Of a stretch of DNA of 64,000 nucleotides, positions 2,189-43,713 are shown one piece after another. The position numbers and the translations under genes are program-made. Every line of letters begins with the position of its first letter. Position 1 is the first letter of the stretch. Location: positions 62,001 through 126,000 of IMG/VR virus record IMGVR_UViG_3300032240_001991; one strand, written 5' to 3'. Below the pieces are notes generated by a model. It had not been told where the DNA came from. It made no database searches and saw nothing but the letters and a program-made list of their open reading frames with translations.

Positions 2189-2213
2189 TTTCTAGTCCTT
2201 GCTGTGTCTGTGT

Positions 2214-2242: not shown

Positions 2243-2245
2243 CCC

Positions 2246-2539: not shown

Positions 2540-2646
2540 TGGTCGATCTCCTTACTGTGTGTCTCTGTCTGCTGCTATTATAGCAGGTTTTACCTAACTG
2601 TCAAGAGCTAGGTAGTTTTTTTACGAGAACTACCAAACTCAAACCC

Positions 2647-3594
2647 TTACTTGGTGTTCAGGAAGGGAATCGGAGCACCTGCGTAGATATTCTGCGGCAG
2701 TTGACCGTTCCACGTCTTGGCCTTCTGCATCTCGACCTCAATGCGACGCAGTTCCAGCACATCCTTGTTCTGGGCCAGTGCAGCGTTCTGCACACGGAGT
2801 GCTTCAGCCTGGGCCTTGGCCACAGTCAAGTTAGCATAGGCCTCACCATCAGCAGTGGCCTTGGCCGCAGCAGCCTCGGCTTCTGCGATAGCGACCTTCT
2901 GCTTCTGCTCAGCCTCAACGGTCTTGAGCTTGTTCTCAGCAGCCAGGCGCAACTGCTCCTGCTCAACCTTGCTGTTGATGGCTCGCATATAACTATCCTG
3001 GAAGGCAAAGTTACGCATATCGATATTGATCACCTGGGCCCCATAGATAGCCAACTTGGCCTGCAGCGTGCTCTTAATGTCAGCAGACACCTGAGCTCGT
3101 TGTGCAATCAAGTCGGGGGCGGTATACTTGGCAGTCACAGCCTTAAACGCTTCCTGCGTGGCAGTCTGAACGTAACTGCTCAAGTCGCCATTGTGGCTGT
3201 ACTTCTCGTAGACTTCAGCAACCTTGTCAGTGGCAATGCTGTAGCGTACAGTAAGGTCAACGTGTACGGGCTGCTGATCGCTGGTGCTACCATCGGCCTT
3301 GTCAATAGAAGCAGTCTCAGCACGAATGCTGAAAATGTTCAACTTCTGCCAGGGCGGAAGGATTGCCAGGCCCTCAGCCTCAATGCCCACGATCTTACCA
3401 AACTGGGTAATGACGCCGCGGCTACCGGTGGGTACCGAAGCAAATGGGTTGGCCCATGCCAAAACCAGCACGCCAGCCACCGCTGCGGCCACATGGGTAA
3501 CGATCTTAGGTACGTTGACGTTGACGTCAGTGACTTCTTCGCCCATGCGATTGGTACGAGTGTTCTTAGTGAAATAACTGTCTGAAAATGACAT
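2647..3594 (-). CDS. SPFH/band-7/prohibitin family membrane protein
   Basis: N-terminal TM helix, VPTGSRGVITQFG, D..V..DLTVRY, coiled-coil AEAEA region, C-terminal W.G.LP. Confidence 0.9.
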   Translation of the reverse strand: MSFSDSYFTKNTRTNRMGEEVTDVNVNVPKIVTHVAAAVAGVLVLAWANPFASVPTGSRGVITQFGKIVGIEAEGLAILPPWQKLNIFSIRAETASIDKADGSTSDQQPVHVDLTVRYSIATDKVAEVYEKYSHNGDLSSYVQTATQEAFKAVTAKYTAPDLIAQRAQVSADIKSTLQAKLAIYGAQVINIDMRNFAFQDSYMRAINSKVEQEQLRLAAENKLKTVEAEQKQKVAIAEAEAAAAKATADGEAYANLTVAKAQAEALRVQNAALAQNKDVLELRRIEVEMQKAKTWNGQLPQNIYAGAPIPFLNTK

Positions 3595-3606
3595 GATATC
3601 GACCTC

Positions 3607-3852
3607 TTACTGGTAAAGTTCGTTGAAACGACGCAGGTCCACCGACAGTTTGTCAGTGGGCAAGTGCTCAGTGACTTCAAATACTTCACTGGTGCTTGCG
3701 GTAGTAATCACTGCAGGAGTGACCTGTGCAGTCTGAGTGGGCTTAGAGTGAAAGAAATAGTAACCTAGCCCAAACACAGTCATGCCTAACAGGGCAATAC
3801 CTGCTACCTTATTAAACTTCTCAAAAGAATCTTCTTTGATCGTAAACTGCAT
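3607..3852 (-). CDS. Small single-TM membrane protein
   Basis: Hydrophobic VAGIALLGMTVFGLGYYFF; GAGGAG RBS; promoter 3882-3909. Confidence 0.75.
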   Translation of the reverse strand: MQFTIKEDSFEKFNKVAGIALLGMTVFGLGYYFFHSKPTQTAQVTPAVITTASTSEVFEVTEHLPTDKLSVDLRRFNELYQ

Positions 3853-3912
3853 ATTGTCTGCTCCTCTGTCTTTGTCTGTGTAGTATAGCAGGTTTTACCA
3901 AAAAGTCAACCT

Positions 3913-4107
3913 TTAGGCCTTATCGAGTACACGAACAACGAGTTCCGTGCTCTTTACAGATTTAACCCGTTCCCATTTCTCTAGGATGTCATTTTTAGAA
4001 AAAGAACACTTCTTCTTGCGCCACTCTAGAAACTCTCGTGCCTCAATCCAGTAGACCGTTGAATCATCAACAGGGTCATACTCTTCAACCAATCGAAACT
4101 TAGCCAT
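3913..4107 (-). CDS. Hypothetical early protein
   Basis: GCAAGGAG leader; promoter 4137-4165. Confidence 0.75.
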   Translation of the reverse strand: MAKFRLVEEYDPVDDSTVYWIEAREFLEWRKKKCSFSKNDILEKWERVKSVKSTELVVRVLDKA

Positions 4108-4161
4108 TTCTCTTGCTCCTTGCTGTGTGTGCGGGTATTATACTAAGGTTTCACCAAAAAG

Positions 4162-4605
4162 TCAAGCCAATTCTTTCTTTGCCGCCCGCTTGCGAGGCAC
4201 GCCCTTCTTAGTGTAACGAACCATTCGAGCGTAACGATGCTGCCCCATCAAGATCTGGATACGACCTTCGAACCCGTCCTTAATAGGAACGTTCCCAGTT
4301 TCAATTTTGAAGTTGTTCTTGTCAAACCACTGAAGCCACTCGTAAAGTTCGGCTTCGGCTTCCTCACCGCGGCTCAATACTGCCACGCAGGGATGCTTAT
4401 GGTAGGCGTTCTCCGGACACCAAATGGCGCCATTCTTATCTGCTCGTTCGTAGTCCTCGTCGTACCATGCATAGTCTGGATAATTACCATCAACTACAAT
4501 TCCCACACAATGCCGTCCGATGCCTACTTCACCTTCAAGAGCCAGTTGACAGTTATTCTTAGCGGCCCACACTGCCATCCAGGTGATCTTCTCTTCATGC
4601 TTCAT
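4162..4605 (-). CDS. Hypothetical early protein (start refined to MKHEEK)
   Basis: AAGGAG RBS before ATG 4605; its stop TGA lies inside the next -35 element. Confidence 0.7.
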   Translation of the reverse strand: MKHEEKITWMAVWAAKNNCQLALEGEVGIGRHCVGIVVDGNYPDYAWYDEDYERADKNGAIWCPENAYHKHPCVAVLSRGEEAEAELYEWLQWFDKNNFKIETGNVPIKDGFEGRIQILMGQHRYARMVRYTKKGVPRKRAAKKELA

Positions 4606-4663
4606 TTTTCGCTCCTTTACACACTTGGGTTTTTCACACCAAGGGTGACGACTGTGAATATCG

Positions 4664-4867
4664 TTATTTCCCATGGGCTAATGACTCTTGAATTTCATTA
4701 ACCCAGCAACTGATGTCGCTGCTGCCGATCTCTTCAAAATCGTAGAGATAAGCGGCCTTTTCGTCGATAGCGTCTAAAAGACGACTGCCATACTCAACTA
4801 GGAGATCTATATGCTGGGTGCGTATACGATAGATGATGCAATCTTTAACTGCTTGACTGCTGCTCAC
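4664..4867 (-). CDS. Hypothetical early protein
   Basis: GCAAGGAG leader; promoter 4897-4926. Confidence 0.7.
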   Translation of the reverse strand: MSSSQAVKDCIIYRIRTQHIDLLVEYGSRLLDAIDEKAAYLYDFEEIGSSDISCWVNEIQESLAHGK

Positions 4868-4922
4868 GGTCTACTCCTTGCTGTGTGTATGAGGCTATTA
4901 TACTATGGTTTTACCAGTACTG

Positions 4923-5513
4923 TCAACCACTATGAGTCTTGAGAACGTCAATCAGGCTCTTGCTTAGGTCCCAGTGGCCCTTCAAAACCGCTTCGCAGGC
5001 CAGCTGGGAGATTCGATCCAGGAATTCCGTTTCTGAGGTGTGCTCTTGCACCAGCACACCCAGTCCCTTGAGTCGAGCCACCAGCTCAGGGTACCCCTCA
5101 GGGTGTTTGACGTAGCAGCCTTGCACATCGTCGTAGGCACGAGGGTCCACCGGCAACTGCTGTGGGCCCTGACGCTCGCTCACCTCTTTGGCTTCACGGA
5201 GACCCAGGTTGGCCAGCTCTCGCAGGGCCTTGATTCCGCTGACCTTGCGATTGCCCCATTCGGTGGGCATGGTTACAGTCACTTTGCTAGGTATCATAAC
5301 AAATCCTTTCTGAGGGAGGCTTCTGCTCAAATTAATGGGCTGCTTCAGAGCGTTACGAGCAATGTCCCGTGCAGCAACCACATCCGCGCGGGCCCACTCG
5401 TTGATGTCCTCGGCATAGTAGATCTTGCGTTCAATCTCAGACAGACTGGTCCGCAGTCGCTGGATTTCGGCTTGCAACAGGTCTTGATCGCTCACGTCTA
5501 CTCCTGTAAACAA
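4923..5513 (-). CDS. Protein with a ribosomal L7/L12 C-terminal-domain-like motif (alternative start at 5297)
   Basis: KVSGIKALRELANLGLREAKEVSE resembles the bL12 CTD KI.VIK.VR..TGLGLKEAK..VE; second RBS GAAAGGA before ATG 5297. Confidence 0.6.
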   Translation of the reverse strand: MFTGVDVSDQDLLQAEIQRLRTSLSEIERKIYYAEDINEWARADVVAARDIARNALKQPINLSRSLPQKGFVMIPSKVTVTMPTEWGNRKVSGIKALRELANLGLREAKEVSERQGPQQLPVDPRAYDDVQGCYVKHPEGYPELVARLKGLGVLVQEHTSETEFLDRISQLACEAVLKGHWDLSKSLIDVLKTHSG

Positions 5514-5543
5514 TAGCCCAGGGTCACATAACCCTGGCGCTCT

Positions 5544-5726
5544 TTATTGTTCGTGTACTATAGCAGGTTTTACCACAGGCGTCAACTGATTTTTTGCCTT
5601 AGGGCCCTTGTACCCCGTGCCCTTCTGATAGATCAACCACACATGGTCAGAGCAGTAACTGCGGTTCTGATAGCCGGGGCGGCCACACTTGGCCTGCCCC
5701 TCATCACGCCATTCACACTTGGGCAC
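5544..5726 (-). CDS. Small Cys/His-containing hypothetical protein
   Basis: C-x10-C-x9-C-x2-H pattern; follows the ATPase gene directly. Confidence 0.6.
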   Translation of the reverse strand: MPKCEWRDEGQAKCGRPGYQNRSYCSDHVWLIYQKGTGYKGPKAKNQLTPVVKPAIVHEQ

Positions 5727-5727
5727 G

Positions 5728-6591
5728 TTACACCCCCTTCTTCATGCAGGTCGTCTTAGCCATACCCTTCCACGCAGCAGGGAAGCTCTTCTTGAGGTCT
5801 GCAATCTTGAGCACCATACGCAGGCTGAGCTCGCGCAGTTGAGTAGAGTTAGTAGCGATGTAATCCAAAATCTCTGCCTTCTCTGCTTCTTCAAACTCGT
5901 ATTTCTGCAACATCCCATCGCCTACAATCTGACGAATACGCAGGAGTTTTTCTCGGTCCGTATCCATCTGCAGGTCAATGTAGTGGCAGCGACTTTCAAG
6001 TGCCATCAAGTGACTACGCAGTTTCTTAGAACGTACATACTCAAATTTGATGTTGGTGATAAAGATCGCAGCACCACAGAACTCAAAGCGGTCTGGAATG
6101 CCTTCGCTACGCAAGAGTCGGCTGTCCAAGTTCCAGCTGATGTAGCGGCGCTCAGAACTGTCTAGCGCACCCTTAAGGATATTGAGGCTCAACTGGTCCA
6201 TGAGCACATCGTCGCAGTCGTCAAAGACCACTACGTTACCCTTATCAGCGAACCCAAACAGTTTAGCATAGAGACCCAGAGCACTCATAGCACCCTTGAC
6301 AATCTCATACTTAGGCTTACGCTGAGCCAAGGTATTGAACAGGTCGTCCTTCTGCAGAACAGCCTCAACACCAAAACTCTTGCCTACGCCGGGCGGCCCG
6401 CTGACAATCATAGCCCGCACATCCCCATGCTTGACAGCACGGGTCATGTCATCTAGAATCTGGAAACGAGAACGCAGGCGCTCAAGAATCTCATCGTCAG
6501 TTTCGGCCTGCACCTCTTGTGCGCGGCGTGCGATTGCTTCTTGGTCAAAGTCAATTACATTCTCAATCTTGGTAGTAGCGGTTCGAGCCAT
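5728..6591 (-). CDS. AAA+ family P-loop ATPase
   Basis: Walker A GPPGVGKS, Walker B VVVFDDCD, arginine-finger region ALESRC. Confidence 0.9.
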   Translation of the reverse strand: MARTATTKIENVIDFDQEAIARRAQEVQAETDDEILERLRSRFQILDDMTRAVKHGDVRAMIVSGPPGVGKSFGVEAVLQKDDLFNTLAQRKPKYEIVKGAMSALGLYAKLFGFADKGNVVVFDDCDDVLMDQLSLNILKGALDSSERRYISWNLDSRLLRSEGIPDRFEFCGAAIFITNIKFEYVRSKKLRSHLMALESRCHYIDLQMDTDREKLLRIRQIVGDGMLQKYEFEEAEKAEILDYIATNSTQLRELSLRMVLKIADLKKSFPAAWKGMAKTTCMKKGV

Positions 6592-6644
6592 TAGGTCACC
6601 TCTGTATATTTAAGACTGTATTATACTGAATTTTTGGTAAAAAG

Positions 6645-7004
6645 TCAATCCATGCGTGAGCCAACACTGGCATCAAGCCCCTGGCTTTTCAGTACCTTAG
6701 CGAACGCATCAGCATAGGCTTCTTTGAGCTCCATGCTCTGATTGCCCTCGTGAACCCAGTATTGCAGCCCCGGCTGGCTGTAACTCTTTTGGAATCCCTG
6801 CTCAGTCAAGCGGCGTCCTACCCGGCTGTTGCTACGGACCCCACGGATATTGACCCAAGCAAACCCACAAGGGCCTCCGGGTACCGTCCACCGATGCTGG
6901 CCGTCAGTGACCACCATGGGTTGAGGATTAGCAGCCTGAAGAGCAGCCATGCCCTGACGGTGCGCTTCTGCAAGAACTTCGTCGATATTCTGTTCAGTTA
7001 CCAT
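6645..7004 (-). CDS. Conserved phage hypothetical protein (start refined to MVTEQ)
   Basis: GCAAGGAG RBS before ATG 7004; promoter 7033-7061. Confidence 0.75.
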   Translation of the reverse strand: MVTEQNIDEVLAEAHRQGMAALQAANPQPMVVTDGQHRWTVPGGPCGFAWVNIRGVRSNSRVGRRLTEQGFQKSYSQPGLQYWVHEGNQSMELKEAYADAFAKVLKSQGLDASVGSRMD

Positions 7005-7047
7005 GTATATGCTCCTTGCTGTCAGTGTGCGTATACTAGCACAGGTT

Positions 7048-7359
7048 TTACCAGCCGTCAACCGGTCGCAGTCCGCTGATTACTCCTGCTTGGCTTAGTG
7101 TATCTTTTACACGGTTAAGGGCAGAACCACTATGGCCCCCAACGTGCCAGGCATAGAGACCCTTGGGAGTTTCGTCTTCCTTCCAATCGTAGATAGTGGC
7201 CACAGTACCATCTGCATACCGTAGTACCCACCCTACCGTAATCTTGTCCCCGCCCATAACATCCGGAGGACCAAATATCGCTACCAGTTGATCATAGGTA
7301 GCAGTAACGTATCCCACAAGGCTAGTGCCGGTGCCTTCGGCGTCTTTAGTAAACTTCAT
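7048..7359 (-). CDS. Conserved phage hypothetical protein
   Basis: GCAAGGAG RBS; promoter 7386-7414; ATIYDWK...W.VGG motif. Confidence 0.75.
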   Translation of the reverse strand: MKFTKDAEGTGTSLVGYVTATYDQLVAIFGPPDVMGGDKITVGWVLRYADGTVATIYDWKEDETPKGLYAWHVGGHSGSALNRVKDTLSQAGVISGLRPVDGW

Positions 7360-7410
7360 CTGGATCTCCTTGCTAGTGTTCGCGTACTATAGCACAGGTT
7401 TTACCAAAAG

Positions 7411-7623
7411 TCAAACTTCGTTGGCGTCTACATCCAGTTCTGTTTCGTCTTGGACATAGTCATAGGCCGAGGTCAATTCTTGATCAAAATCCCATTCACT
7501 TGTTTCTGCACAGTAGTGAATGATGTCTGCGATAAGATCTGCCGGACGAGTATAATTCTCGTTATTAAGGAACATCTGGGCCACTCGACCCACTGCCTGC
7601 TGGCGAAAAGTAAGATAGGTCAT
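7411..7623 (-). CDS. Hypothetical early protein
   Basis: GAGGAG RBS; acidic C-terminus. Confidence 0.7.
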   Translation of the reverse strand: MTYLTFRQQAVGRVAQMFLNNENYTRPADLIADIIHYCAETSEWDFDQELTSAYDYVQDETELDVDANEV

Positions 7624-7647
7624 TATCGCTCCTCAAGTCAAACGTAG

Positions 7648-7672
7648 GGGGGTGCAGTTGCCTACACCCCCC
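7648..7672 (-). terminator. GC-rich stem-loop, probable terminator
   Basis: GGGGGTG-cagttgccta-CACCCCC immediately after the stop at 7679. Confidence 0.5.
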
Positions 7673-7678
7673 AGTGGA

Positions 7679-7882
7679 TTAGCCCACCAGCGCGTTGTTA
7701 CGCACGGTGTTGCTAACGCGGCCGTACAGCCCATCGGCCGCCTTCTCCGAGATCTCCTTGCGGAGACCGCCCGACGCCGTTCCGTTGCCGCTCAACATAC
7801 GCGCCACAGCACGGATGCTGCGGAACTTGTAGGTCAGGCCCGAGTTCGGAAAGGTCACATCGATCGTTACATTGCGCTTCAT
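7679..7882 (-). CDS. Small basic hypothetical protein
   Basis: AAGGAGAG RBS; promoter 7926-7954. Confidence 0.7.
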   Translation of the reverse strand: MKRNVTIDVTFPNSGLTYKFRSIRAVARMLSGNGTASGGLRKEISEKAADGLYGRVSNTVRNNALVG

Positions 7883-7969
7883 TTCAACTCTCCTTAAGTT
7901 ACTAGCACCTTGCTAGTATGTCGTTACTATAACACCGTCTAATGACTGTGTCAACCTTTTTTTACCAAA

Positions 7970-8614
7970 TCAGTGAGCGTAGTAGCCCACGTTCTCAACA
8001 CTCTCATCCCAACAGGCACGGCACGAGCCGCACTCATTGTCCTGGAAACGGCTTGGGCAATCATACCCATGCGCTTCGCTGTTCTTGTGCACGGTGCTGG
8101 TGTGCGTCCACCCCTTGGGCGGCTCAGCATCAATCATCTGTGCACTCATACGAATTACAAGGTTCTTAGGCCGAGTATACTGCCTTAGGAACTCTCGCAC
8201 AATACCAAACTCACGGGTAGGCAACCAATGGTCGATCCAGGGCGTCAATTCAGCCACGCGAGCAATCATCATAAGATGCTTCACGCTCTGCAGGTCCCCA
8301 CTGTCGTGCCAGCGAAAGTATTCTTCATTCTGCATCAATTTGACCATTGCACTGACCCACGAGTCCTCTGTAAGAGTGTCGTGTAGGGCTTCTACGAGCG
8401 TCGTGTAGCGGCGATCGTGAGCGGCCACTGTGCTCTTCCAAGTGTAAGCACCTTTGAGTGCGTAGCACTTAAAGCAGACGCTGCCCTCAACCAATCGTAG
8501 TTTGCTGCCAGTATGACATTTCTTAGCACTGAAGCCAAAACTCTTGCCTGGCATCTTAGAAGGCTCACTCAATCCTCCTACGAACTCTCCTGCTGCTGCC
8601 TTGGTCTTGAACAT
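7970..8614 (-). CDS. Gp88-like protein (Cys-rich)
   Basis: C..GSKL....SVC..CYA, FRWHDSGD, WLPTRE, C-terminal C.SC.ACW; typical of the mycobacteriophage gp88 family. Confidence 0.75.
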   Translation of the reverse strand: MFKTKAAAGEFVGGLSEPSKMPGKSFGFSAKKCHTGSKLRLVEGSVCFKCYALKGAYTWKSTVAAHDRRYTTLVEALHDTLTEDSWVSAMVKLMQNEEYFRWHDSGDLQSVKHLMMIARVAELTPWIDHWLPTREFGIVREFLRQYTRPKNLVIRMSAQMIDAEPPKGWTHTSTVHKNSEAHGYDCPSRFQDNECGSCRACWDESVENVGYYAH

Positions 8615-8671
8615 TTCTGCTCCTTGCTAGTGTTCGTGTACTATAACACAGGTTTTACCAAAGGTCAACCA

Positions 8672-8857
8672 CTAACTATTCCAAGGAACGGTTCTCACGG
8701 TAACGCCGTCCCTGTCTGTTTCATAGAGGCCGGCTTCGTGTATGATGTATTGATCTTGAAAATGATCAAACTCTAGATCTGCACGATCCTTGGCCTCCTC
8801 TTCGGTACAGTCCGGAAGATCTACTTCTACTTGGATACGCATCATGTACTTAGGCAT
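8672..8857 (-). CDS. Hypothetical early protein
   Basis: Small acidic ORF in the early cassette. Confidence 0.6.
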   Translation of the reverse strand: MPKYMMRIQVEVDLPDCTEEEAKDRADLEFDHFQDQYIIHEAGLYETDRDGVTVRTVPWNS

Positions 8858-8941
8858 TAGAACCCCTCAGGAAGATAGCCCGTAAGCCGCTCTATCGCTT
8901 CAACTAACGAAAACCCCATCTCTTTACGCATATTATTCTCC

Positions 8942-9295
8942 TTAATCAGAACTGTCAACATCGTTGATCTGACCGCAATGAACACACTCATAGCGATTGT
9001 AGCAACGTCCAAGATTCATCGTCCGCACCCACTCATGCCCAGAGCACTTCGCAGCAATGGCCTCAGTCACATAGCCATGTCCGTAGCAGTGACTACACGC
9101 ACAGGTGAAGTGTCTGTAGCGATGCCGATTCTCTGGAGTGTCAGGTCTACCGTGTAGACTGTAGGAGTTGAGACTGAGATTCCAACCACCATACCCACGA
9201 CACTTTGGGCACTCTACGATGTAATCATACAGAGGTTCCTTGCGCGAGAAGTCCACGAAGGCATCTGGATGATCTGGCGTAAGAAAGTCTGACAT
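8942..9295 (-). CDS. Zn-finger protein with DnaJ-type CxxCxGxG repeats
   Basis: CPKCRGYGG and CSHCYGHG plus CVHCG; GCAAGGAG RBS; promoter 9325-9352. Confidence 0.75.
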   Translation of the reverse strand: MSDFLTPDHPDAFVDFSRKEPLYDYIVECPKCRGYGGWNLSLNSYSLHGRPDTPENRHRYRHFTCACSHCYGHGYVTEAIAAKCSGHEWVRTMNLGRCYNRYECVHCGQINDVDSSD

Positions 9296-9348
9296 ATGTT
9301 ACTCCTTGCTCTAACTATGCGACTATTATAGCAGGTTTTACCAAAAAG

Positions 9349-9972
9349 TCAACCTTCGTATTCACCTTCTGGATCAATCCCATGTTTATTGAGATCGATC
9401 TCTAAATTCTCTTCATCATCCCCGTCCTCATCTTCATACTCTGCCTGCTCGCGTTCGTACTCTTCAATCTGCTCGGAGATACAGAAACGTTCGTCCAGTT
9501 CAGTAATCTGTTCACGGACCTGGTCAGCAGTCCATCCGCTATAGTCTACGGAATTATCTCCTTCACTGTTAGTAAAGGTTCCTGCAAATTGCATACCTTG
9601 TTCATGATAGTAGGCTTCAACTTCAAAGCCCTGCTTTACCATATACTCAAAGAAAGCAATAGGTGGCCCCCATGCACTGTCAAAGAAGAGTTCGATGAGA
9701 TCAACTTCTTCATTGATGATGCGGGCGTCAACATCCCACTTGATTCCCCAGTTCTTGCATTGCCAACTATACCAGTCTGGAGCACCGTACTTCTCAATGA
9801 ACTCAGTGGCTCGCTGCCCTTCCCATTCGGGCGAACAATATTCATGCAACTCTGCAGGGCAAGGCAAGAACTCGTTGAATAATCGGTCGGCCTTGACGCC
9901 AGTCTTGACTCGCAAGATCATAGCCGGGTCCTTGTGGGTAAAGGTCACGTGATTCGCGCACCAATTTGGCAT
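9349..9972 (-). CDS. DUF1281/YubB-like ferredoxin-fold protein
   Basis: MPNWCAN, DWYSWQCKNWGIKWD, FDSAWGPP, YYHEQG motifs. Confidence 0.85.
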   Translation of the reverse strand: MPNWCANHVTFTHKDPAMILRVKTGVKADRLFNEFLPCPAELHEYCSPEWEGQRATEFIEKYGAPDWYSWQCKNWGIKWDVDARIINEEVDLIELFFDSAWGPPIAFFEYMVKQGFEVEAYYHEQGMQFAGTFTNSEGDNSVDYSGWTADQVREQITELDERFCISEQIEEYEREQAEYEDEDGDDEENLEIDLNKHGIDPEGEYEG

Positions 9973-10025
9973 TTAAAATTCCTCTTGTTAGTGTCTGTGT
10001 ACTATAGCAGAGGTTTTACCAATTG

Positions 10026-10211
10026 TCAACCTCTCATTAGGTCAAAGATGCTTCGTTGTAGATCTGCCAGTTCATCATGCGGAACATAAAAGTCTGTTCT
10101 AGGATCCCAGTACTCGCCCTCTTTGGGATCATAGTACAAGACCCTGCCGTTGGGATACTGGAAGGGGCCTTCCAACCCCTTCCTGGGCCCATAGTCTTTA
10201 GAGAGGGCCAT
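10026..10211 (-). CDS. Conserved phage hypothetical protein (start refined to MALSK)
   Basis: GLEGPF.YPNGRVLYYDPKEGEYWDP.TD motif. Confidence 0.7.
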   Translation of the reverse strand: MALSKDYGPRKGLEGPFQYPNGRVLYYDPKEGEYWDPRTDFYVPHDELADLQRSIFDLMRG

Positions 10212-10362
10212 TGACGCGCCGGTCAAGTGCGGCACCCCAACCAGCAAAGGCTACCACCCATGCAATAGAAGCACTAGAGTCACCCAAATACCAGTTGATA
10301 AGAAAAAGAATCAGCGTTGATGCCACTAGGCCAAATTCAAGAAAAGTAAGATACCGTTTCAT
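10198..10362 (-). CDS. 54-aa two-TM membrane protein (not in the ORF track)
   Basis: Manual translation MKRYLTFLEFGLVASTLILFLINWYLGDSSASIAWVVAFAGWGAALDRRVNGPL; AAGGAG RBS. Confidence 0.6.
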   Translation of the reverse strand: MKRYLTFLEFGLVASTLILFLINWYLGDSSASIAWVVAFAGWGAALDRRVNGPL

Positions 10363-10448
10363 AAGAACTCCTTAAGAATGGCAGTTTTTTCTGTAGTGCT
10401 GCCAACTGCGGTCTATACTTATATAGCGCCTGTCCTCGCGCTTCCGGA

Positions 10449-10781
10449 TTAGGCTGCGTCGCGCAGGCGATAAATCACGCCCGTCGCAGTCTCCACAATG
10501 TCAACATCGCTGTTGGCAGCGTACCAGTCAAAGTTACGGACCTTGGTGCTGTCACGCTCCCAGTCGGTAGGACCTTCAACCTTGACCGCAAGCCACTTCT
10601 TGCGGATGTTGAAGAACACGCGACGTCCTGGGTAGACTTCGCGAACACGTTCAGCAAAGTGTTCACCGCCCTTGATGTAAGAGTCGGGCCAAAGCCGGCG
10701 GTTCTCGCGGCTCTTGTTGACGGCGTCCACGTAGGCGCCCACGCGATCAGATGCAAACCAGTTTTCAGTACGCTTGAACAT
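10449..10781 (-). CDS. Hypothetical early protein
   Basis: AAGGAG RBS; promoter 10821-10849. Confidence 0.75.
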   Translation of the reverse strand: MFKRTENWFASDRVGAYVDAVNKSRENRRLWPDSYIKGGEHFAERVREVYPGRRVFFNIRKKWLAVKVEGPTDWERDSTKVRNFDWYAANSDVDIVETATGVIYRLRDAA

Positions 10782-10857
10782 TTTTCGCTCCTTTTGCTAG
10801 CACCTTGCTAGCGTGCCAATACTATAACAAAGGTTTTACCAACTGTCAACCATTAAA

Positions 10858-11190
10858 AAAATGCATTCTCCCTGCTGGCGGTATTTTCCATTCACCACAA
10901 ACAATTATGTGGTATCCGCTGCCCAACACAGGGAGACTGTCGTGCTGCTAACGCCCGTTTGGTTTGACGGCAGTATTGCTACTGGAGACCATTGACCACT
11001 CACCTTGCGGTGGATAGGCTGTTCTCAAACCACCCGTAGATGTCACTCTACTTCTATCGTGCGGGTCACACTAGCCGCTAACTAGGCGGCGTGTTCAGTA
11101 AAGATTGGTTGGAAAGATTCGTCAAAATCTATCTTCGCCAGTTGACGCTGACCGCCCAAACCTGGGCGCCAATCTTAAATCGTTTAACTT
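10858..11190 (-). ncRNA. Candidate large structured ncRNA A (about 330 nt), family not recognised
   Basis: No ORF of 60 aa or more in 10782-11234; own promoter 11197-11225; at least eight helices including two GCAA tetraloop hairpins; ends in a U-tract. Confidence 0.65.
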
Positions 11191-11234
11191 GGGTCTAGCA
11201 TAACAATTTTACCAAACCCTGTCAACCAAATTGT

Positions 11235-11480
11235 TTACTCTTCTACCGCAATGACAGAATCCTTGCGGAAACTGCGCCATCCGGCCTTTTCCACATCCCA
11301 AACGCTGACCACATCGGGATTAGGAACTCGAGCCTGCCCCGTGCCAGTGCTGGGCGGCAAACGGCTTTCCTGCAGAGTGCAACGAAGATTCCGTACTGTG
11401 CCATCGCTCTTAGTAAAGCGAACAGTACGCTCACCCAAACGTAGGTCATTCAGCAACTGATCAAAATTGATCTTAGTCAT
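11235..11480 (-). CDS. DUF2693/WYL_2-like SH3 beta-barrel protein
   Basis: V.FTKSDGTVRNLRCTL...VWDVEKAGWRSFR motif; AAGGAG RBS; promoter 11505-11533. Confidence 0.75.
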   Translation of the reverse strand: MTKINFDQLLNDLRLGERTVRFTKSDGTVRNLRCTLQESRLPPSTGTGQARVPNPDVVSVWDVEKAGWRSFRKDSVIAVEE

Positions 11481-11539
11481 ATAGATACTCCTTATTGAGC
11501 CGCCACTATAGCATCAAGAGGGCCTGCTGTCAATTTCTT

Positions 11540-11875
11540 CTTAATTGGGAGTGGGGGTGGACCCCATGTGGTTCCTGAGCAGGTGTCTGTTGACGCGCCC
11601 AGACAAGATTCTGCTCATATATAAGAGTGTGGAGCCGCTGGCTATGGGTGTACCGCGGCTCCCTCCACGACTTTCTGGGATCGAAATCCGCCCTAGACCT
11701 CTGATGTGGGTAGTCGTCTCAGCATTATCGCACCCGGTACACAAGATCTTCCTAATCTTCCGCCGGACTGTTATCCAGCCCGCAACTATGTTGACCAGTT
11801 AGGTCCGGACCTACCCTAGCGATTATCAGCATCCTAGGTCAGCTTTGGACTTCACTTTCTGCTTGGAGTTTTAAC
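11540..11875 (-). ncRNA. Candidate large structured ncRNA B (about 335 nt), family not recognised
   Basis: Starts just after TAAATA (11881-11886); nine or more helices, a UUCG loop, a 7-8 bp pseudoknot; only RBS-less shadow ORFs overlap it. Confidence 0.6.
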
Positions 11876-11892
11876 AAAAGTATTTAACCAGT

Positions 11893-11976
11893 TGGTGCGA
11901 GTGGAGGGATTCGAACCCTCAAGCCGTTGGGCGGCAGATTTTAAGTCTGCTGTGTATACCGTTCCACCACACTCGC
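11893..11976 (-). tRNA. trnL: tRNA-Leu(UAA)
   Basis: GCGAGTG acceptor, anticodon arm GCAGA-CTTAAAA-TCTGC, long variable arm, GGTTCGAATCC T-arm, encoded CCA. Confidence 0.97.
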
Positions 11977-12012
11977 ATATCATACAGTAATTATATATTC
12001 TAAATCTAAATA

Positions 12013-12142
12013 GTCCTAGCCTCGGTTTACTATTCTCTTGCTACCTGATGCAGATGCTTACAGCATCATTTACTAGTATCACAGGCTACCCGCTTCGAAC
12101 AAGGTTAGGTTTGTACTCAACCCGACGAGCCGAGGCTAGGAC
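12013..12142 (-). ncRNA. Candidate 130-nt RNA with 13-bp paired ends inside the tRNA operon
   Basis: GTCCTAGCCTCGG (12013-12025) is the exact reverse complement of CCGAGGCTAGGAC (12130-12142); internal GATGCT-tac-AGCATC hairpin. Confidence 0.6.
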
Positions 12143-12147
12143 ATAAT

Positions 12148-12223
12148 TGGTGGGCCCTCAGGGATTCGAACCCTGAACCAAAGGATTATGAGTCCTCTGC
12201 TCTAACCGTTGAGCTAAAGGCCC
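12148..12223 (-). tRNA. trnI: tRNA with CAU anticodon, probably tRNA-Ile2 (lysidine type) rather than Met
   Basis: 76 nt, GGGCCTT/GAGGCCC-like acceptor ending GGGCCCACCA, anticodon arm GAGGA-CTCATAA-TCCTT, encoded CCA; lacks the initiator GGG/CCC anticodon stem and 1:72 mismatch. Confidence 0.9.
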
Positions 12224-12243
12224 GTGTATATTATTACAGCGGG

Positions 12244-12251
12244 GTATTTAT
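12244..12251 (-). promoter_or_regulatory. T4-type late promoter TATAAATA driving the tRNA/ncRNA cluster
   Basis: Exact TATAAATA on the minus strand about 20 nt upstream of the tRNA(CAU) 5' end. Confidence 0.7.
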
Positions 12252-12253
12252 AA

Positions 12254-12394
12254 TTAACACTCCGTAAGATAGTGATATTCACGCCCTGGAAATTGTGCTT
12301 CGATTAGCCTCTTAGCATCCCAATAGTCTCGAGCCTGCAGCTCATAATCAACTGATCTTCCGTCTATCATCAGTGTACAACGATACCTACGCAT
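12254..12394 (-). CDS. 46-aa hypothetical protein (not in the ORF track)
   Basis: MRRYRCTLMIDGRSVDYELQARDYWDAKRLIEAQFPGREYHYLTEC; promoter TTGACA-17-TATACT at 12426-12454; GAGAG RBS. Confidence 0.65.
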   Translation of the reverse strand: MRRYRCTLMIDGRSVDYELQARDYWDAKRLIEAQFPGREYHYLTEC

Positions 12395-12485
12395 ATATGT
12401 ACTCTCTATCTGTTAGTGTCTGCATAGTATAGGGTCAGATCAGTAAGTTGTCAACAGTGGCCTAAATATATACAGCGGGGTATTA

Positions 12486-13202
12486 CTAGGTACGCCCTGC
12501 CCTTACTACATCTATAAAGAAGTTACCCTGTTTAATTTTATATCCGTTAGATATGATTTGATAGGCTAGTAGTGTCTCTGAGTGCGGAGTTAGTCCTTTC
12601 GATATAAATTCGTTAAAATGATTAACAGAGTCAGTGTACAGTCGCATACCGTTTGAAGATGATACAGCAAAGGATGAGTTGATTTGATAACCGTTATGAC
12701 CATGACCTATGTTGCTATCAGTAACTATAGTGTTAGGGTCACGAGATATAACATCATTAACTTCTCTAAGATCTAAAGGTGTGCCTTTTACTCCCGCATC
12801 AGGACGAGCTCTGATCACAAGGTCGTACTCACCGTGAGTTTTTTCATACTCTTGTCTAAGTAAATCAGATTGGTGTAGACTGGTATAATGCATCCAAAGT
12901 CTAAAGTCAGTAACAGATCGGTTATGCGGACTGATGTGAGGGAAGTTTTCCATATCATCAAGTTTGAGTACTACCAGTCTATGTCCTGCTGGTAACCCTT
13001 TTTCTATTTTGGATAAGGTACTTTGGTAGTCTAAGGTATCACTCCATTCGGGTAACATTAGAGAAGTATCACCGTCAACAATATTGTTTCTCCATAGATA
13101 AACGAACCAATCTATTTGATCAGCGCCAACGATGTTTTTACAAAAGAAATCAAACTCTCTGCAGAATCTGGGTTGACCTGCAATAATTCCTGCAACTTTC
13201 AT
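12486..13202 (-). CDS. Putative glycosyltransferase-related protein
   Basis: N-terminal AGIIAGQPR and YDLVIRARPD motifs, as seen in phage and giant-virus glyco-gene families; TAAATA upstream. Confidence 0.5.
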   Translation of the reverse strand: MKVAGIIAGQPRFCREFDFFCKNIVGADQIDWFVYLWRNNIVDGDTSLMLPEWSDTLDYQSTLSKIEKGLPAGHRLVVLKLDDMENFPHISPHNRSVTDFRLWMHYTSLHQSDLLRQEYEKTHGEYDLVIRARPDAGVKGTPLDLREVNDVISRDPNTIVTDSNIGHGHNGYQINSSFAVSSSNGMRLYTDSVNHFNEFISKGLTPHSETLLAYQIISNGYKIKQGNFFIDVVRAGRT

Positions 13203-13239: not shown

Positions 13240-13268
13240 TTGACTGCTGAAAAAACCTTTGCTATAGT
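13240..13268 (+). promoter_or_regulatory. Early sigma70 promoter at the strand switch
   Basis: TTGACT-17 nt-TATAGT, with a GAAAAAACC variant of the box in the spacer. Confidence 0.75.
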
Positions 13269-13299: not shown

Positions 13300-13677
13300 A
13301 TGGGTACTAATTATTACGTTGCCAAAAACAAGTGCGAATGCTGCAAACGCTATGACGAAGAATTCCATATTGGAAAGTCTTCTAGCGGTTGGGCATTTAC
13401 CTTTCAAGGCTACAAGTATGATGGTCTAGTCTCTTGGAAGTTTTACAAAGAATATCTCAAGGATAAGATTATCATGGATGAGTATGGAGAACAAATTTCC
13501 TATGATGAGTTTGTTTATATGGTAGAAACCTACAAGTCTCCAAATTATATTAATCCACATAACGGAATCAAGAATCATCTTCATAATGATGCTGCGCGAA
13601 AGCAGGGTTATTTCAATCCTGATTATGATTGGGATGATGAAGATGGGTATTCTTTTGGGACAAGGGAGTTTTCGTGA
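13300..13677 (+). CDS. Conserved phage hypothetical protein (start refined to MGTNYY)
   Basis: MGTNYY...HIGKSS.GW.F motif; GAGAG RBS. Confidence 0.8.
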   Translation: MGTNYYVAKNKCECCKRYDEEFHIGKSSSGWAFTFQGYKYDGLVSWKFYKEYLKDKIIMDEYGEQISYDEFVYMVETYKSPNYINPHNGIKNHLHNDAARKQGYFNPDYDWDDEDGYSFGTREFS

Positions 13678-13797
13678 CAAAGAATCAACATCGCCGGCGC
13701 AGTCTAAAAGACCTAGACCGTGTAATAGAAGAGAGCATTGCTCGCAATCCTATATGGTATGCAGAGATACAACAAATTATCAAAGAGAAGTTGAAGA

Positions 13798-14010
13798 ATG
13801 CGCGAAAAACTAGATAGCGACGGACGACCTGCCTCCTTTCACAAAGGAGATAGGGTATTTGTTATTCCTGTAAAAATGGAGGCAACTGTTATTCGTCAAA
13901 TTCTTCATTATGATATGTACGAATCATTCTGGGGAAATCTAGAACTAGAGTACGACGACGGTAAGAAAGGCACTTGCAACTGCTGGCAGGTTAAGAGGGT
14001 TGAAGAATGA
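13798..14010 (+). CDS. Hypothetical protein
   Basis: Part of a coupled run of small ORFs (13674-14968) with ATGA overlaps. Confidence 0.7.
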   Translation: MREKLDSDGRPASFHKGDRVFVIPVKMEATVIRQILHYDMYESFWGNLELEYDDGKKGTCNCWQVKRVEE

Positions 14011-14149
14011 CCGCTGAACAAATTGAAAAGATTATGAAACTTGTAGATGAGTATGGTCGTCAACGCTCACTTGGCAATGAGTATGATAATCGAACCTTTG
14101 AGCAAGAAGCAAGAAATAAGATTGTTGAAGCACTAAAAAAGGTAAAGCA

Positions 14150-14344
14150 ATGAACGAATATCAAGACTTGATTGAGGCACTCAATCTAGCCATTCGCAAT
14201 GTAAACAAATCTATTGACATCGAACAGCGTATTAGCCATGATGTTCATAAGCATCAAGGGCTTGTGCAAGTGCGAGACCAACTTGAAAAGTATCGCGAGG
14301 GTGTGGTAGCACTACGGAAGCGTATGGAGGTTGTAGGTCGATGA
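14150..14344 (+). CDS. Hypothetical coiled-coil protein
   Basis: AAGG RBS; coupled to its neighbours. Confidence 0.65.
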   Translation: MNEYQDLIEALNLAIRNVNKSIDIEQRISHDVHKHQGLVQVRDQLEKYREGVVALRKRMEVVGR

Positions 14345-14489
14345 ACAAACAAAAACGTCGTCGCTGCTGCAATTGCAATATGTTGACTTTAAAATGGCAA
14401 CGAATTAATGGAAGCCCTTGGCATTGCTATGATGGCTGCAAAAGCACTACTGGCTGGGATCATAGGTTACAACATTTTGGAGTTGAAGA

Positions 14490-14732
14490 ATGACCAAACA
14501 GATGGATCGTTGGGACAGCAGTAAACCCACAAGCGAACAAGCGTTTTTGGGCGATGTAACAATCATTGTCAAAACTGAACACGCTCGCGAACAGTTGCTG
14601 CTAGCATTAGAATATCTTCACGATGCCAGTCTTGATAAACATTCTACAATTGATACCAACTATATGGCGGTAAACTCTCTACTTCATGGGTACCAAGACT
14701 ATAAAATATTGGTTAAAGGAGTTGAACAATGA
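14490..14732 (+). CDS. Hypothetical protein
   Basis: GGAG RBS; ATGA overlap with the next ORF. Confidence 0.65.
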   Translation: MTKQMDRWDSSKPTSEQAFLGDVTIIVKTEHAREQLLLALEYLHDASLDKHSTIDTNYMAVNSLLHGYQDYKILVKGVEQ

Positions 14733-14968
14733 TTTTCCTAGGTTTTATGTTGGGTTTGCTTTTTTGCGTTTTAGCAATGTCACTGTGGTATTGGTTAGAC
14801 GAACGTCGAGAGAAACGCGAGATTGAACAGTCTACACCCGAACAAATTGACGAATTAATGGTACAAGAATATCTATCACTCTTTGTGGAAAAGGATCGCA
14901 AGAATCTCTGTAGACAACGAGCACTTGAAAAGTTTAAGCAGCAATATGGACGAGATCCTCAGCTATAA
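14729..14968 (+). CDS. Single-TM membrane protein
   Basis: N-terminal MIFLGFMLGLLFCVLAMSLWYW; AAGGAG RBS. Confidence 0.7.
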   Translation: MIFLGFMLGLLFCVLAMSLWYWLDERREKREIEQSTPEQIDELMVQEYLSLFVEKDRKNLCRQRALEKFKQQYGRDPQL

Positions 14969-15005
14969 ACTAATAGATAGTAATTACAGCGGGGTATTAC
15001 CCGCA

Positions 15006-15033
15006 GGGCATACTGATAAATATCAGTATGCCC
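15006..15033 (+). promoter_or_regulatory. Perfect 12-bp hairpin containing a late promoter and masking the AUG of the next gene
   Basis: GGGCATACTGAT-aaat-ATCAGTATGCCC; TAAATA at 15017-15022, ATG at 15028. Confidence 0.8.
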
Positions 15034-15282
15034 ACATTTAAAGAAATACTCCTACATACCTTTACTGGACGTGATAACTCCACAATAGACATCGGCCGAA
15101 TAATTTGGATGTTGGGTGCTTTATCTTTTCTAGGCTGCGCATTTTACAGCATATACAAAGGGCAGACTTGGAACGCCGTAGAATTCGGCACCGGGTTCGG
15201 GGCTGTATTAGCAGCAGGCGGAGTTGCTATTAGAATAAAAGCAGATACTGAACCTGACCCTAAAGATAAATCAAATTCATAA
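15028..15282 (+). CDS. Two-TM membrane protein, holin-like candidate
   Basis: TMs IIWMLGALSFLGCAFYSIY and FGTGFGAVLAAGGVAI, charged C-terminus; late promoter. Confidence 0.55.
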   Translation: MPTFKEILLHTFTGRDNSTIDIGRIIWMLGALSFLGCAFYSIYKGQTWNAVEFGTGFGAVLAAGGVAIRIKADTEPDPKDKSNS

Positions 15283-15316
15283 TCGCGTAAATTAAAATTA
15301 CAGCGGGGTTTTACGT

Positions 15317-15883
15317 TTAGCCTATTCGAAATGTAGTCCAAGCACTGGCACCACCTATAGTGACAAAGGCAGTTCTCAAATGAGCAGTGTTAACTAACCC
15401 TGAGTTACTGCTGTAGATGGTTGCACTACCTACAAAGTTATGAGCAGACCCTGCGGCCAATGTCACTGTTCCTGCTACCGCAGTTGACGTATTAATGATA
15501 TACCAATCATATGCCAAGTTTTGAGGCGCGCTGCCACCGTATATAGCATTGAACCCGCCTGATATTATAGTATTAGTTGGAAGGGTCAATGCAATCGTAG
15601 TTCCCCCACCTCCTGACCCTACTAACAGCACTCCGGCGAATATGTTTGACGTTGTTAATGTTGTAGTTGCAGGTAGAAAAACAGGATTGGGTTGATACGT
15701 CAACTGATATCCACCGGTAAATATTAGGTTTTTTGAAGCAAGGATCGAGAGCCCGGCGTATATTCCGCCGGTTGTTTGTATACTTCCAAGGCCTTGAGTA
15801 GCTTCGATAGAACCGTTAACTATTATTTGGCTATCAACCGTTGCTGTTCCGTAGACTCTAGTTCCTGAAAGTAGTTTTGCCAT
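15317..15883 (-). CDS. Putative virion structural (fibre-associated) protein
   Basis: G/T/S/A-rich beta-type sequence; TAAATA 6 nt before the ATG. Confidence 0.6.
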   Translation of the reverse strand: MAKLLSGTRVYGTATVDSQIIVNGSIEATQGLGSIQTTGGIYAGLSILASKNLIFTGGYQLTYQPNPVFLPATTTLTTSNIFAGVLLVGSGGGGTTIALTLPTNTIISGGFNAIYGGSAPQNLAYDWYIINTSTAVAGTVTLAAGSAHNFVGSATIYSSNSGLVNTAHLRTAFVTIGGASAWTTFRIG

Positions 15884-15897
15884 ATAGGTTATTTATT

Positions 15898-43701: not shown

Positions 43702-43713
43702 AATAAATAAAGG

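What the first reader, a model, noticed from the sequence alone, without database searches (positions are those of the whole stretch)
15006..15282. Perfect hairpin that hides the AUG of a holin-like gene from early read-through, with the late promoter in its loop
Seen: GGGCATACTGAT-aaat-ATCAGTATGCCC, with TAAATA across the loop and ATG 15028 in the right arm. The gene lies downstream of an early plus-strand operon and encodes two TM helices. Known: T4 blocks early translation of late genes (e, soc, I-TevI) with hairpins that late transcripts lack. Inference: the same timing switch is applied to a membrane-toxic or lysis protein, and the late mRNA would be almost leaderless.
Basis: partly seen in the sequence, partly recalled or inferred. 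Interest (0 to 1): 0.6.

Follow-up and report, generated by a model that had tools for sequence, protein, structure and literature searches.

The report
Hairpin timing switch on holin-like gene
In an uncultured 327-kb T4-like jumbo phage, a perfect 12-bp RNA hairpin buries the start codon of a small holin-like membrane protein in early read-through transcripts. A late promoter in the hairpin loop should give a hairpin-free, leaderless late mRNA, so this looks like a new variant of the timing switch T4 uses on its lysozyme gene.

Summary
Arms 15006-15017 and 15022-15033 pair perfectly (loop AAAT; -20.6 kcal/mol, z -7.1). ATG 15028 lies in the 3' arm and GATAAATA (15015-15022) spans the loop.

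- The genome is a 326,658-bp metagenomic phage contig. It encodes a gp55 late sigma factor.
- ATAAATA behaves as its late promoter. It is depleted 2-fold, and 60 of 79 sites are intergenic.
- By T4 geometry, transcription starts at the A of ATG 15028.
- 21 late genes share this promoter-N4-8-ATG layout, so a leaderless late mRNA is normal for this phage.
- A consensus early promoter (13240-13268) heads a chain of small ORFs. The chain runs into the hairpin with no canonical terminator.
- Among the 21 leaderless genes, only this AUG is fully sequestered by bases that the late RNA would lack.
- The 84-aa product has two hydrophobic segments. Its homologues sit directly after endolysins (three endolysin families, including cultured Caulobacter phages) or before spanin-like genes.

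Weak points: there are no transcript data, the hairpin is absent from all 17 homologue loci, and the family matches no known holin family.

Verdict: a new variant of a known kind. Confidence is about 0.6.

The parts
13240..13268 (+). Early (sigma-70-type) promoter TTGACT-17-TATAGT that heads the plus-strand small-ORF operon
   Evidence: It matches the phage's own early-promoter family (TTGAC[AT]..AAAACCT..GCTATAGT). 48 of 89 genome matches are intergenic, against 12% intergenic DNA.
13300..14968 (+). Chain of about 8 small, mostly overlapping ORFs (a presumed early operon). It ends with a 79-aa protein that has an N-terminal hydrophobic segment (14729-14968).
   Evidence: gene calls of the source record. 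Only a weak, non-significant terminator-like site lies inside it (13603).
14987..14998 (+). Copy of the 12-nt motif CAGCGGGGTATT. Its GCGGG pairs with CCCGC 15000-15004 to form a small hairpin at 14989-15004.
15006..15017 (+). 5' arm of the perfect hairpin. It is present only in transcripts that start upstream.
15015..15022 (+). Late-promoter box GATAAATA (gp55 type), spanning the end of the 5' arm, the loop and the first base of the 3' arm
   Evidence: G at the first position occurs in 15 of 79 sites.
15022..15033 (+). 3' arm of the hairpin. It contains the start codon ATG 15028-15030. The predicted late +1 is base 15028.
   Evidence: T4 box geometry is from PMC2988020.
15028..15282 (+). 84-aa two-TM, holin-like membrane protein of an uncharacterised phage family
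   Evidence: Lysis-cassette context of homologues.
15301..15312 (+). Second copy of the motif (CAGCGGGGTTTT). Together with 14984-14997 it brackets the hairpin+ORF cassette (shared AATTACAGCGGGGT).
15317..15897 (-). Convergent 188-aa late gene with its own promoter-adjacent start. The AATAAATA box is at 15897-15890, and the ATG at 15883 lies 7 nt after the last A of the box.

Best explanation
This is a T4-type temporal translation switch, adapted to a leaderless late mRNA.

Early in infection, host RNA polymerase starts at the early promoter at 13240-13268. It transcribes the small-ORF operon and reads on past its last stop codon (14968) into the 84-aa gene. In that long RNA, bases 15006-15017 pair perfectly with 15022-15033. 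The AUG at 15028 has no Shine-Dalgarno sequence and sits in the middle of a -20.6 kcal/mol stem, so no ribosome can start there.

Late in infection, the phage's gp55-type sigma factor recognises GATAAATA (15015-15022) in the loop. It starts transcription about 6 nt downstream, at or next to the A of the AUG. That RNA lacks the 5' arm and is unstructured, so it would be translated as a leaderless mRNA.

The product is a small two-TM membrane protein of a family found in phage lysis cassettes, most likely a holin or pinholin-like protein. The switch would keep it from being made before the late phase.

Shown from sequence: the hairpin, the motif, the spacing, the gp55 gene, the promoter statistics, the lack of a canonical terminator, and the lysis-cassette context of homologues.

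Inferred: the actual transcript 5' ends, read-through, the translation block, and holin activity.
For: - Hairpin: -20.6 kcal/mol, z -7.1. It is one of only 5 loci with perfect stems of 12 bp or more.
- gp55 homologue: tblastn E 4e-7, next to gp47/gp46 homologues; phrog_12791, E 1e-63.
- ATAAATA: 79 sites against about 175 expected. 60 of 79 are intergenic, against 8-22% for control 7-mers apart from the motif's own reverse complement, and nearly all point at a gene start.
- Spacing from the box to an ORF-opening ATG is bimodal. 21 sites fall at 5-9 nt, none at 10-13, and 30 at 14-38. This site is at 6.
- In 18 of those 21 genes, the ATG is the first possible start codon of its ORF.
- Members of the class include virion structural proteins, a gp25-like baseplate wedge protein and a GH19 lysin.
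- The T4 box occupies -13 to -6 (PMC2988020).
- Across all 79 sites, this one shows the largest energy difference between read-through and late RNA, -31.6 against 0.0 kcal/mol.
- It is the only one of the 21 promoter-adjacent starts whose AUG pairs with probability 1.0 to bases absent from the late RNA.
- The early-promoter family and its member at 13240 come. No significant terminator lies between it and the hairpin.
- Precedent in T4 genes e, soc, I-TevI and segB, and in Aeh1 mobE: PMC3014915 and PMC2988022.
- Homologues lie directly after endolysins of three PHROG families (894, 315, 6523), including in Caulobacter phage RLK, or directly before Rz-like/signal-peptide proteins.
- One of the nearest Atlas clusters is auto-named 'Holin family protein'.
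Against: - There are no transcript or protein data.
- None of the 17 homologue loci carries a comparable hairpin, so there is no covariation support.
- An internal AUG without a Shine-Dalgarno sequence might be poorly translated even without the hairpin, so the hairpin may not be needed for this purpose.
- The palindrome folds equally well in the antisense RNA, at -20.7 kcal/mol. It could therefore serve as a 3'-end structure for either of the convergent transcripts.
- The box has G, not T or A, at its first position.
- The family matches no Pfam or PHROG holin model.
- In this genome the nearest lysin is 28 kb away.
- Rho-dependent termination upstream cannot be excluded.
Confidence: 0.6

Rival explanations
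1. The hairpin, together with the small one at 14989-15004, is mainly a transcript-end structure. It would act as a weak intrinsic terminator or 3'-exonuclease barrier for the early plus-strand operon, and, because it is a palindrome, also for late minus-strand transcripts that run out of the 188-aa gene through the antisense of the 84-aa gene. Occlusion of the AUG would then be a side effect.
For: Two adjacent stem-loops lie 21-65 nt after the operon's last stop codon. The hairpin forms on both strands, -20.6 and -20.7 kcal/mol. No convincing terminator lies in the 34-nt convergent gap 15283-15316.
Against: No U-tract follows the stem on either strand: ACAUUUAAAG on plus and UGCGGGUAAU on minus. 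The phage's evident terminators are GC-rich stems flanked flush by A- and T-runs. The consensus scan reports no terminator here. This reading does not explain why the promoter box sits exactly across the loop with the same box-to-ATG spacing as 20 other genes.
Confidence: 0.17
2. The 28-bp palindrome acts at the DNA level, as an operator for a dimeric phage or host regulator that sits on the late promoter. This would parallel I-TevI binding an operator that overlaps its own late promoter.
For: The inverted repeat is perfect and centred on the promoter box. There is a precedent for protein occlusion of a T4 late promoter (PMC2988022).
Against: The arm sequence occurs nowhere else as a repeated site. 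The hairpin census lists it once. Operators rarely need 12 of 12 perfect arms. No candidate regulator was identified. The asymmetric AAAT centre and the inclusion of the AUG fit an RNA role better.
Confidence: 0.07
3. The hairpin is a scar or by-product of cassette insertion with no regulatory role. The hairpin+ORF unit is bracketed by two copies of AATTACAGCGGGGT and lies in a plastic early region.
For: Direct repeats flank the unit at 14984-14997 and 15298-15311. A related phage fragment (L032) carries an 84%-identical neighbour gene but has other ORFs downstream and no 84-aa gene. Homologues elsewhere lack the hairpin.
Against: Nine perfect pairs beyond those fixed by the promoter box have a chance of about 4e-6 per site (direct calculation). 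Insertion does not explain pairing that ends just past the AUG. The rest of the genome shows no such structure at the other promoter-adjacent starts.
Confidence: 0.06

Closest known systems
T4 gene e (lysozyme) translational occlusion hairpin, and the same device at soc, I-TevI/II/III, segB and Aeh1 mobE
   Same: A late gene sits inside or behind an early/middle transcription unit. A stable RNA structure in the long transcripts sequesters the translation initiation region. A gp55-type late promoter is placed so that late transcripts lack the 5' strand and are translated (PMC3014915 and PMC2988022). In T4 it also protects against premature lysis.
   Different: In T4 the structure hides a Shine-Dalgarno sequence plus the AUG, and late RNAs keep a short leader with the Shine-Dalgarno sequence. 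Here there is no Shine-Dalgarno sequence at all. The promoter box lies across the loop and the predicted +1 is the A of the AUG, so the late mRNA is leaderless. The protected gene is a holin-like membrane protein rather than the endolysin. The stem is a perfect 12-bp palindrome.
Lambda S holin sdi stem-loop (from my own knowledge, not checked here)
   Same: An RNA stem-loop at the 5' end of a holin gene tunes translation initiation of a lethal membrane protein.
   Different: The lambda structure sets the ratio of two start codons (holin versus antiholin) on one late transcript. It is not a temporal switch between transcripts from different promoters.
Class II holins / pinholins such as S21 (from my own knowledge)
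   Same: About 70-85 aa, two transmembrane segments, one of them Gly/Ala-rich, a charged C-terminal tail, and a gene next to the endolysin in many phages.
   Different: No sequence match to any Pfam or PHROG holin family. The conserved N-terminal FTGxDNxTIDIGR block is not a feature I know from described holins. Activity is untested.
Leaderless phage mRNAs, e.g. lambda cI from PRM (from my own knowledge)
   Same: Transcription starts at the A of the AUG, and translation proceeds without a Shine-Dalgarno sequence.
   Different: Here it appears as a whole class of about 21 gp55-dependent late genes. My literature searches found no report of this for T4-type late promoters. T4 itself shows no enrichment of the box-N4-8-ATG pattern.

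Membership tests
T4-type late-gene occlusion hairpin (e/soc/I-TevI class) | The phage uses gp55-type late transcription with a TATAAATA-like box | tested here: met
   gp55 homologue. ATAAATA is depleted, 76% intergenic and oriented towards genes.
T4-type late-gene occlusion hairpin (e/soc/I-TevI class) | The gene lies downstream of, and co-oriented with, an early/middle unit that can read into it | tested here: met
   Early-promoter family member at 13240-13268, a contiguous plus-strand ORF chain to 14968, and no canonical terminator. This rests on sequence only.
T4-type late-gene occlusion hairpin (e/soc/I-TevI class) | A stable RNA structure sequesters the initiation region in the long transcript | tested here: met
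   -20.6 kcal/mol, z -7.1. The AUG is paired with probability 1.0.
T4-type late-gene occlusion hairpin (e/soc/I-TevI class) | The late promoter is placed so that late RNA lacks the 5' strand of the structure | tested here: met
   Box at 15015-15022 and predicted +1 at 15028. The first 32 nt of the late RNA are unpaired.
T4-type late-gene occlusion hairpin (e/soc/I-TevI class) | The long transcript is demonstrably not translated, and late 5' ends are mapped | not testable with these tools
The phage is uncultured.
Holin | Small membrane protein with at least one TMD and a charged C-terminus | tested here: met
   Hydropathy peaks at residues 24-43 and 53-70; tail KADTEPDPKDKSNS.
Holin | The gene sits in a lysis cassette next to an endolysin or spanin | tested here: inconclusive
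   Met for homologues: L006, L011, L012, L013-16 and Caulobacter phage RLK follow endolysins, and L004, L007, L009 and L013 precede spanin-like genes. Not met in this genome, where the GH19 lysin is 28 kb away and no partner homologues were found.
Holin | Sequence membership of a described holin family | tested here: not met
   No Pfam or PHROG holin hit for any of the 14 members. Only a weak hit to phrog_3996, 'membrane protein'.
Holin | Forms lethal membrane lesions that release endolysin | not testable with these tools
   Needs expression and complementation assays.
Intrinsic (Rho-independent) terminator | GC-rich stem immediately followed by a U-tract | tested here: not met
   The tail is ACAUUUAAAG. 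It is not reported by the consensus scan. The genome's own terminators have flush T-runs.
Leaderless mRNA | No Shine-Dalgarno sequence, and a promoter spaced so that +1 falls on or next to the AUG | tested here: met
   Only TCAGT lies between the box and the ATG, with d=6. It belongs to a class of 21 such genes.
Leaderless mRNA | Mapped 5' end at the AUG | not testable with these tools
   No RNA data are available.

The most novel reading that the evidence does not exclude
This uncultured T4-like jumbo phage expresses a whole class of about 21 late genes as gp55-dependent leaderless mRNAs. It reserves AUG-burying hairpins, with the late promoter in the loop, for its lysis genes. The device is perfect on the holin-like 84-aa gene and weaker on the GH19 lysin. 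The promoter, the transcription start, the start codon and the safety catch would then be compressed into 28 nt. That combination has not been described for T4-type late transcription.
Probability: 0.35. Interest if true: 0.7.

Novelty: new variant of a known kind. Interest (0 to 1): 0.55.

Why it matters
If the reading is right, the T4 solution for late genes stranded in early units extends to a very distant, uncultured jumbo relative. That solution is to hide the initiation region in long transcripts and place a late promoter inside the structure. Here it is applied to a holin-like gene, and it has been re-engineered for leaderless translation. That makes a testable link between gp55-type promoters and leaderless mRNAs.

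The analysis also gives a functional lead for an unannotated family of 75-85-aa phage membrane proteins. They recur beside endolysins, including in cultured Caulobacter phages where the lead can be tested.

In practice, the 28-nt element is a compact promoter-plus-translation gate that could be assayed with simple reporters.

Tried and rejected
- A nucleotide search of the locus against 50,697 phage records found no match.
- A degenerate DNA pattern for the N-terminus found no hits in metagenome contigs. The window's own record and near-identical ones may have been withheld.
- A near-identical 14.7-kb contig exists in JGI sample 3300037994, but its DNA could not be read.
- I looked for the hairpin upstream of 5 metagenome and 12 IMG/VR homologues and found none. 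Covariation could therefore not be tested.
- The syntenic relative found through the neighbour gene (L032) lacks the 84-aa gene at that place. The 188-aa neighbour has no relatives in IMG/VR.
- The upstream 79-aa TM protein shows no similarity to the spanin-like neighbours of homologues.
- The partner endolysins and spanins of homologues have no counterparts in this genome.
- Pfam and PHROG scans of all 14 family members found no holin family.
- Phmmer of the Caulobacter phage endolysin against PDB sequences found nothing.
- The Met28 alternative start was rejected, because the conserved N-terminal block lies upstream of it.
- An RNase III target was rejected from my own knowledge, since a 12-bp stem is too short.

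Full report
WHAT IS THERE

The arm GGGCATACTGAT (15006-15017) and its perfect complement (15022-15033) are separated by AAAT. ATG 15028-15030 lies in the 3' arm, and the 8-mer GATAAATA occupies 15015-15022. The ATG opens an 84-codon ORF that ends at 15282.

Folded as RNA, the hairpin is worth -20.6 kcal/mol (z -7.1; none of 200 shuffles fold as well). A small second hairpin at 14989-15004 lies just upstream. Genome-wide there are only five loci with perfect stems of 12 bp or more and loops of 3-8 nt. Markov simulations of the genome gave 0-2.

THE GENOME

The window is bases 62001-126000 of a single 326,658-bp contig. It is a metagenome-assembled phage, JGI 3300032240. GC content is about 37%, with a 50%-GC island at genome position 50-74 kb.

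The contig encodes collagen-like and other virion proteins, ribonucleotide reductase, a DNA ligase and a GH19 lysin. It also encodes a clear homologue of the T4 late sigma factor gp55, lying next to gp47/gp46 homologues. The evidence is tblastn E 4e-7, plus phrog_12791 'sigma factor for late transcription' at E 1e-63 and phrog_234 at E 4e-24. T4-type late transcription is therefore expected.

It has no nucleotide-level relative among 50,697 phage records.

THE LATE PROMOTER

- ATAAATA occurs 79 times, against about 175 expected from base composition.
- 60 of the 79 sites are fully intergenic, although only 12% of the genome is intergenic by my crude gene calling.
- Control AT-rich 7-mers are 8-22% intergenic. 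TAAATAA and AATAAAT, which overlap the motif itself, are 38% and 26%.
- Nearly all sites point at a nearby gene start.
- The base before the motif is A (34), T (22), G (15) or C (8), so GATAAATA is a normal variant.

LEADERLESS CLASS

I measured the distance from the last A of the box to the next ATG that opens an ORF of at least 40 codons. It is bimodal: 5-9 nt at 21 sites, none at 10-13 nt, and 14-38 nt at 30 sites, the latter usually with a visible Shine-Dalgarno sequence. Control 7-mers reach 5-10 nt in 1-9% of sites, against 27% here.

- In 18 of the 21 genes, that ATG is the first possible start codon of its ORF.
- In 19 of the 21, no downstream alternative start with a Shine-Dalgarno sequence exists within 40 codons.
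- Members include virion structural proteins, a gp25-like baseplate wedge protein, a Dps-like protein, the GH19 lysin and the convergent 188-aa neighbour.

The T4 late box occupies -13 to -6 (PMC2988020). A spacing of 6 therefore puts +1 on the A of the AUG, and the site studied here has spacing 6.

The pattern box-N4-8-ATG occurs 24 times in this genome, against 7 for the reversed control. In T4 it occurs 4 times against 5 for the control. In a 39.6-kb fragment of a related phage it occurs 3 times against 0.

So the 'almost leaderless' late mRNA, which at first looks like a weakness of the hypothesis, is in fact a house style of this phage. My searches found no report of this for gp55-type promoters.

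EARLY READ-THROUGH

A second promoter family, TTGAC[AT]-N16-18-TAnnnT, often carries the spacer GGTAAAACCTG and a -10 element TATA[AG]T. 48 of its 89 matches are intergenic. It is densely packed on the minus strand of the GC-rich island.

One member lies on the plus strand at 13240-13268 (TTGACT-17-TATAGT, with TG). It heads a chain of about eight small, mostly overlapping ORFs that ends at 14968, 59 nt before the ATG.

The consensus scan finds no terminator between that promoter and the hairpin, apart from a weak AT-rich site inside an ORF, and the count is no higher than in shuffled sequence. The hairpin is followed by ACATTTAAAG, not a T-run. The phage's evident terminators are GC stems flanked flush by A- and T-runs. 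Read-through into the 84-aa gene is therefore the expected default, although Rho-dependent termination cannot be judged from sequence.

THE SWITCH

- A read-through RNA folds to -31.6 kcal/mol around the site, while an RNA starting at the predicted +1 folds to 0.0. This is the largest difference among all 79 sites.
- The first 32 nt of the late RNA are unpaired.
- Among the 21 promoter-adjacent starts, this is the only one whose AUG pairs with probability 1.0 to bases the late RNA would lack.
- By the 6-nt measure, the runner-up (0.83) is the GH19 lysin gene. An imperfect hairpin at 43688-43721 (-12.3 kcal/mol, z -2.55) also has the box in its loop and the AUG in its 3' arm.

This is the arrangement documented for T4 gene e, soc, I-TevI, segB and Aeh1 mobE. 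In T4 gene e, the long transcripts yield 100-fold less lysozyme (PMC3014915 and PMC2988022).

THE PROTEIN

The product has two hydrophobic segments (about residues 24-43 and 53-70, the second Gly/Ala-rich) and a charged tail.

Word-based and pattern-based searches found 5 metagenomic homologues and 12 IMG/VR homologue loci, with 32-74% identity in the alignments. tblastn also found four cultured Caulobacter phages. All are 73-94 aa and share the blocks FTGxDNxTIDIGRIxW, GTGFGAVLAxGG and K..TEP. The N-terminal block fixes ATG 15028 as the start.

No Pfam or PHROG family covers them. Gene context, however, is consistent:
- The homologue overlaps the end of an endolysin gene in L006, L011 and Caulobacter phage RLK (phrog_894), in L012 (phrog_315), and in L013-16 (phrog_6523).
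- It precedes Rz-like or signal-peptide proteins in L004, L007 and L009. In L013 the Rz-like gene lies two genes downstream.
- One of the nearest Atlas clusters is auto-named 'Holin family protein'.

I therefore call it holin-like. This rests on topology and neighbourhood, not on homology to a described holin or on any assay. In this genome the gene is not next to a lysin, which is usual for T4-like phages (my own knowledge).

WEAKNESSES AND RIVALS

- No homologue locus has the hairpin, so there is no covariation evidence.
- The only close variant contig could not be read.
- The palindrome folds equally well on the antisense strand, and the convergent gene pair lacks a clear terminator. A role as an RNA 3'-end structure is therefore possible and is not exclusive.
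- An operator role for the DNA palindrome cannot be excluded.
- The hairpin+ORF unit is bracketed by two copies of AATTACAGCGGGGT. A related phage fragment has other ORFs at the syntenic position. The unit therefore looks like an inserted cassette in a plastic early region. That is exactly the situation in which T4 uses this device for late genes.

VERDICT

It is a new variant of a known mechanism: the switch is fused to a leaderless start and placed on a holin-like gene. My confidence in the mechanism is about 0.6.

Noticed in passing
Whole genome; in the window e.g. 15883 (-), 25403, 43714, 57863 and 60452 (-): About 21 late genes have NATAAATA only 4-8 nt before their ATG and no Shine-Dalgarno sequence, so they are predicted to be gp55-dependent leaderless mRNAs. 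The spacing is bimodal (5-9 against 14-38 nt). T4 shows no such enrichment, while a related 39.6-kb fragment does (3 against 0).
   Followed up: partly
Window 43688-43721 (+), start of the GH19 lysin gene 43714-45024: A second, imperfect hairpin with the late box in its loop and the AUG in its 3' arm (-12.3 kcal/mol, z -2.55). It ranks second of the 21 promoter-adjacent starts for AUG sequestration. It could be an analogue of the T4 gene e structure.
   Followed up: partly
Window 12237, 12473, 14987 and 15301; genome 57045, 59094 and 61836 (all + strand): The 12-nt motif CAGCGGGGTATT has 7 copies on one strand only, within 20 kb. In the minus sense it reads (T)AAATACCCCGCTG. Copies lie just beyond the stops of minus-strand genes and just upstream of tRNA-Met on the minus strand. 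Two copies bracket the 84-aa gene cassette. Its function is unexplained.
   Followed up: partly
Window 1-12500 (genome 50-74 kb): This is a 50%-GC island in a 37%-GC genome. It carries about 25 near-identical minus-strand early promoters (TTGACnnTTGGTAAAACCTGCTATAAT), each before a small gene. It is reminiscent of the PeSL promoter cassettes of T4-like hyperplastic regions (PMC2839356, PMC4122927).
   Followed up: no
Window 59234-59615 (+); 11893-11976 and 12148-12223 (-): The phage carries a two-piece (permuted) tmRNA that matches the betaproteobacterial model (130.6 bits; tag ANDDVYAMELAA). This suggests a betaproteobacterial host. An early-type promoter match at 59235-59263 overlaps its 5' end. 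tRNA-Leu(taa) and tRNA-Met(cat) lie downstream of a TATAAATA box on the minus strand at 12252-12245.
   Followed up: no
Genome 105714, 198275, 122452 (-), 304715, 87403: Several promoter-adjacent late ORFs begin with MRI(T/N)E(I/L)L. Between the GH19 lysin and a 152-aa protein, similarity is confined to the first ~20 residues. It could be a shared N-terminal tag or an mRNA-level signal for leaderless initiation.
   Followed up: partly
L003 436-876, L008 2930-3370, L031 1663-2016; genome 234750-235199: Dps/ferritin-like genes (phrog_3636 / phrog_858) recur within one or two genes of homologues of the 84-aa protein in unrelated phages. This genome's own Dps-like gene belongs to the leaderless late class.
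   Followed up: no
Window 14729-14968 (+): The last ORF of the early operon (79 aa) has an N-terminal hydrophobic segment followed by a highly charged, probably helical region. The layout is antiholin- or i-spanin-like. It shows no similarity to the spanin-like neighbours of homologues.
   Followed up: partly
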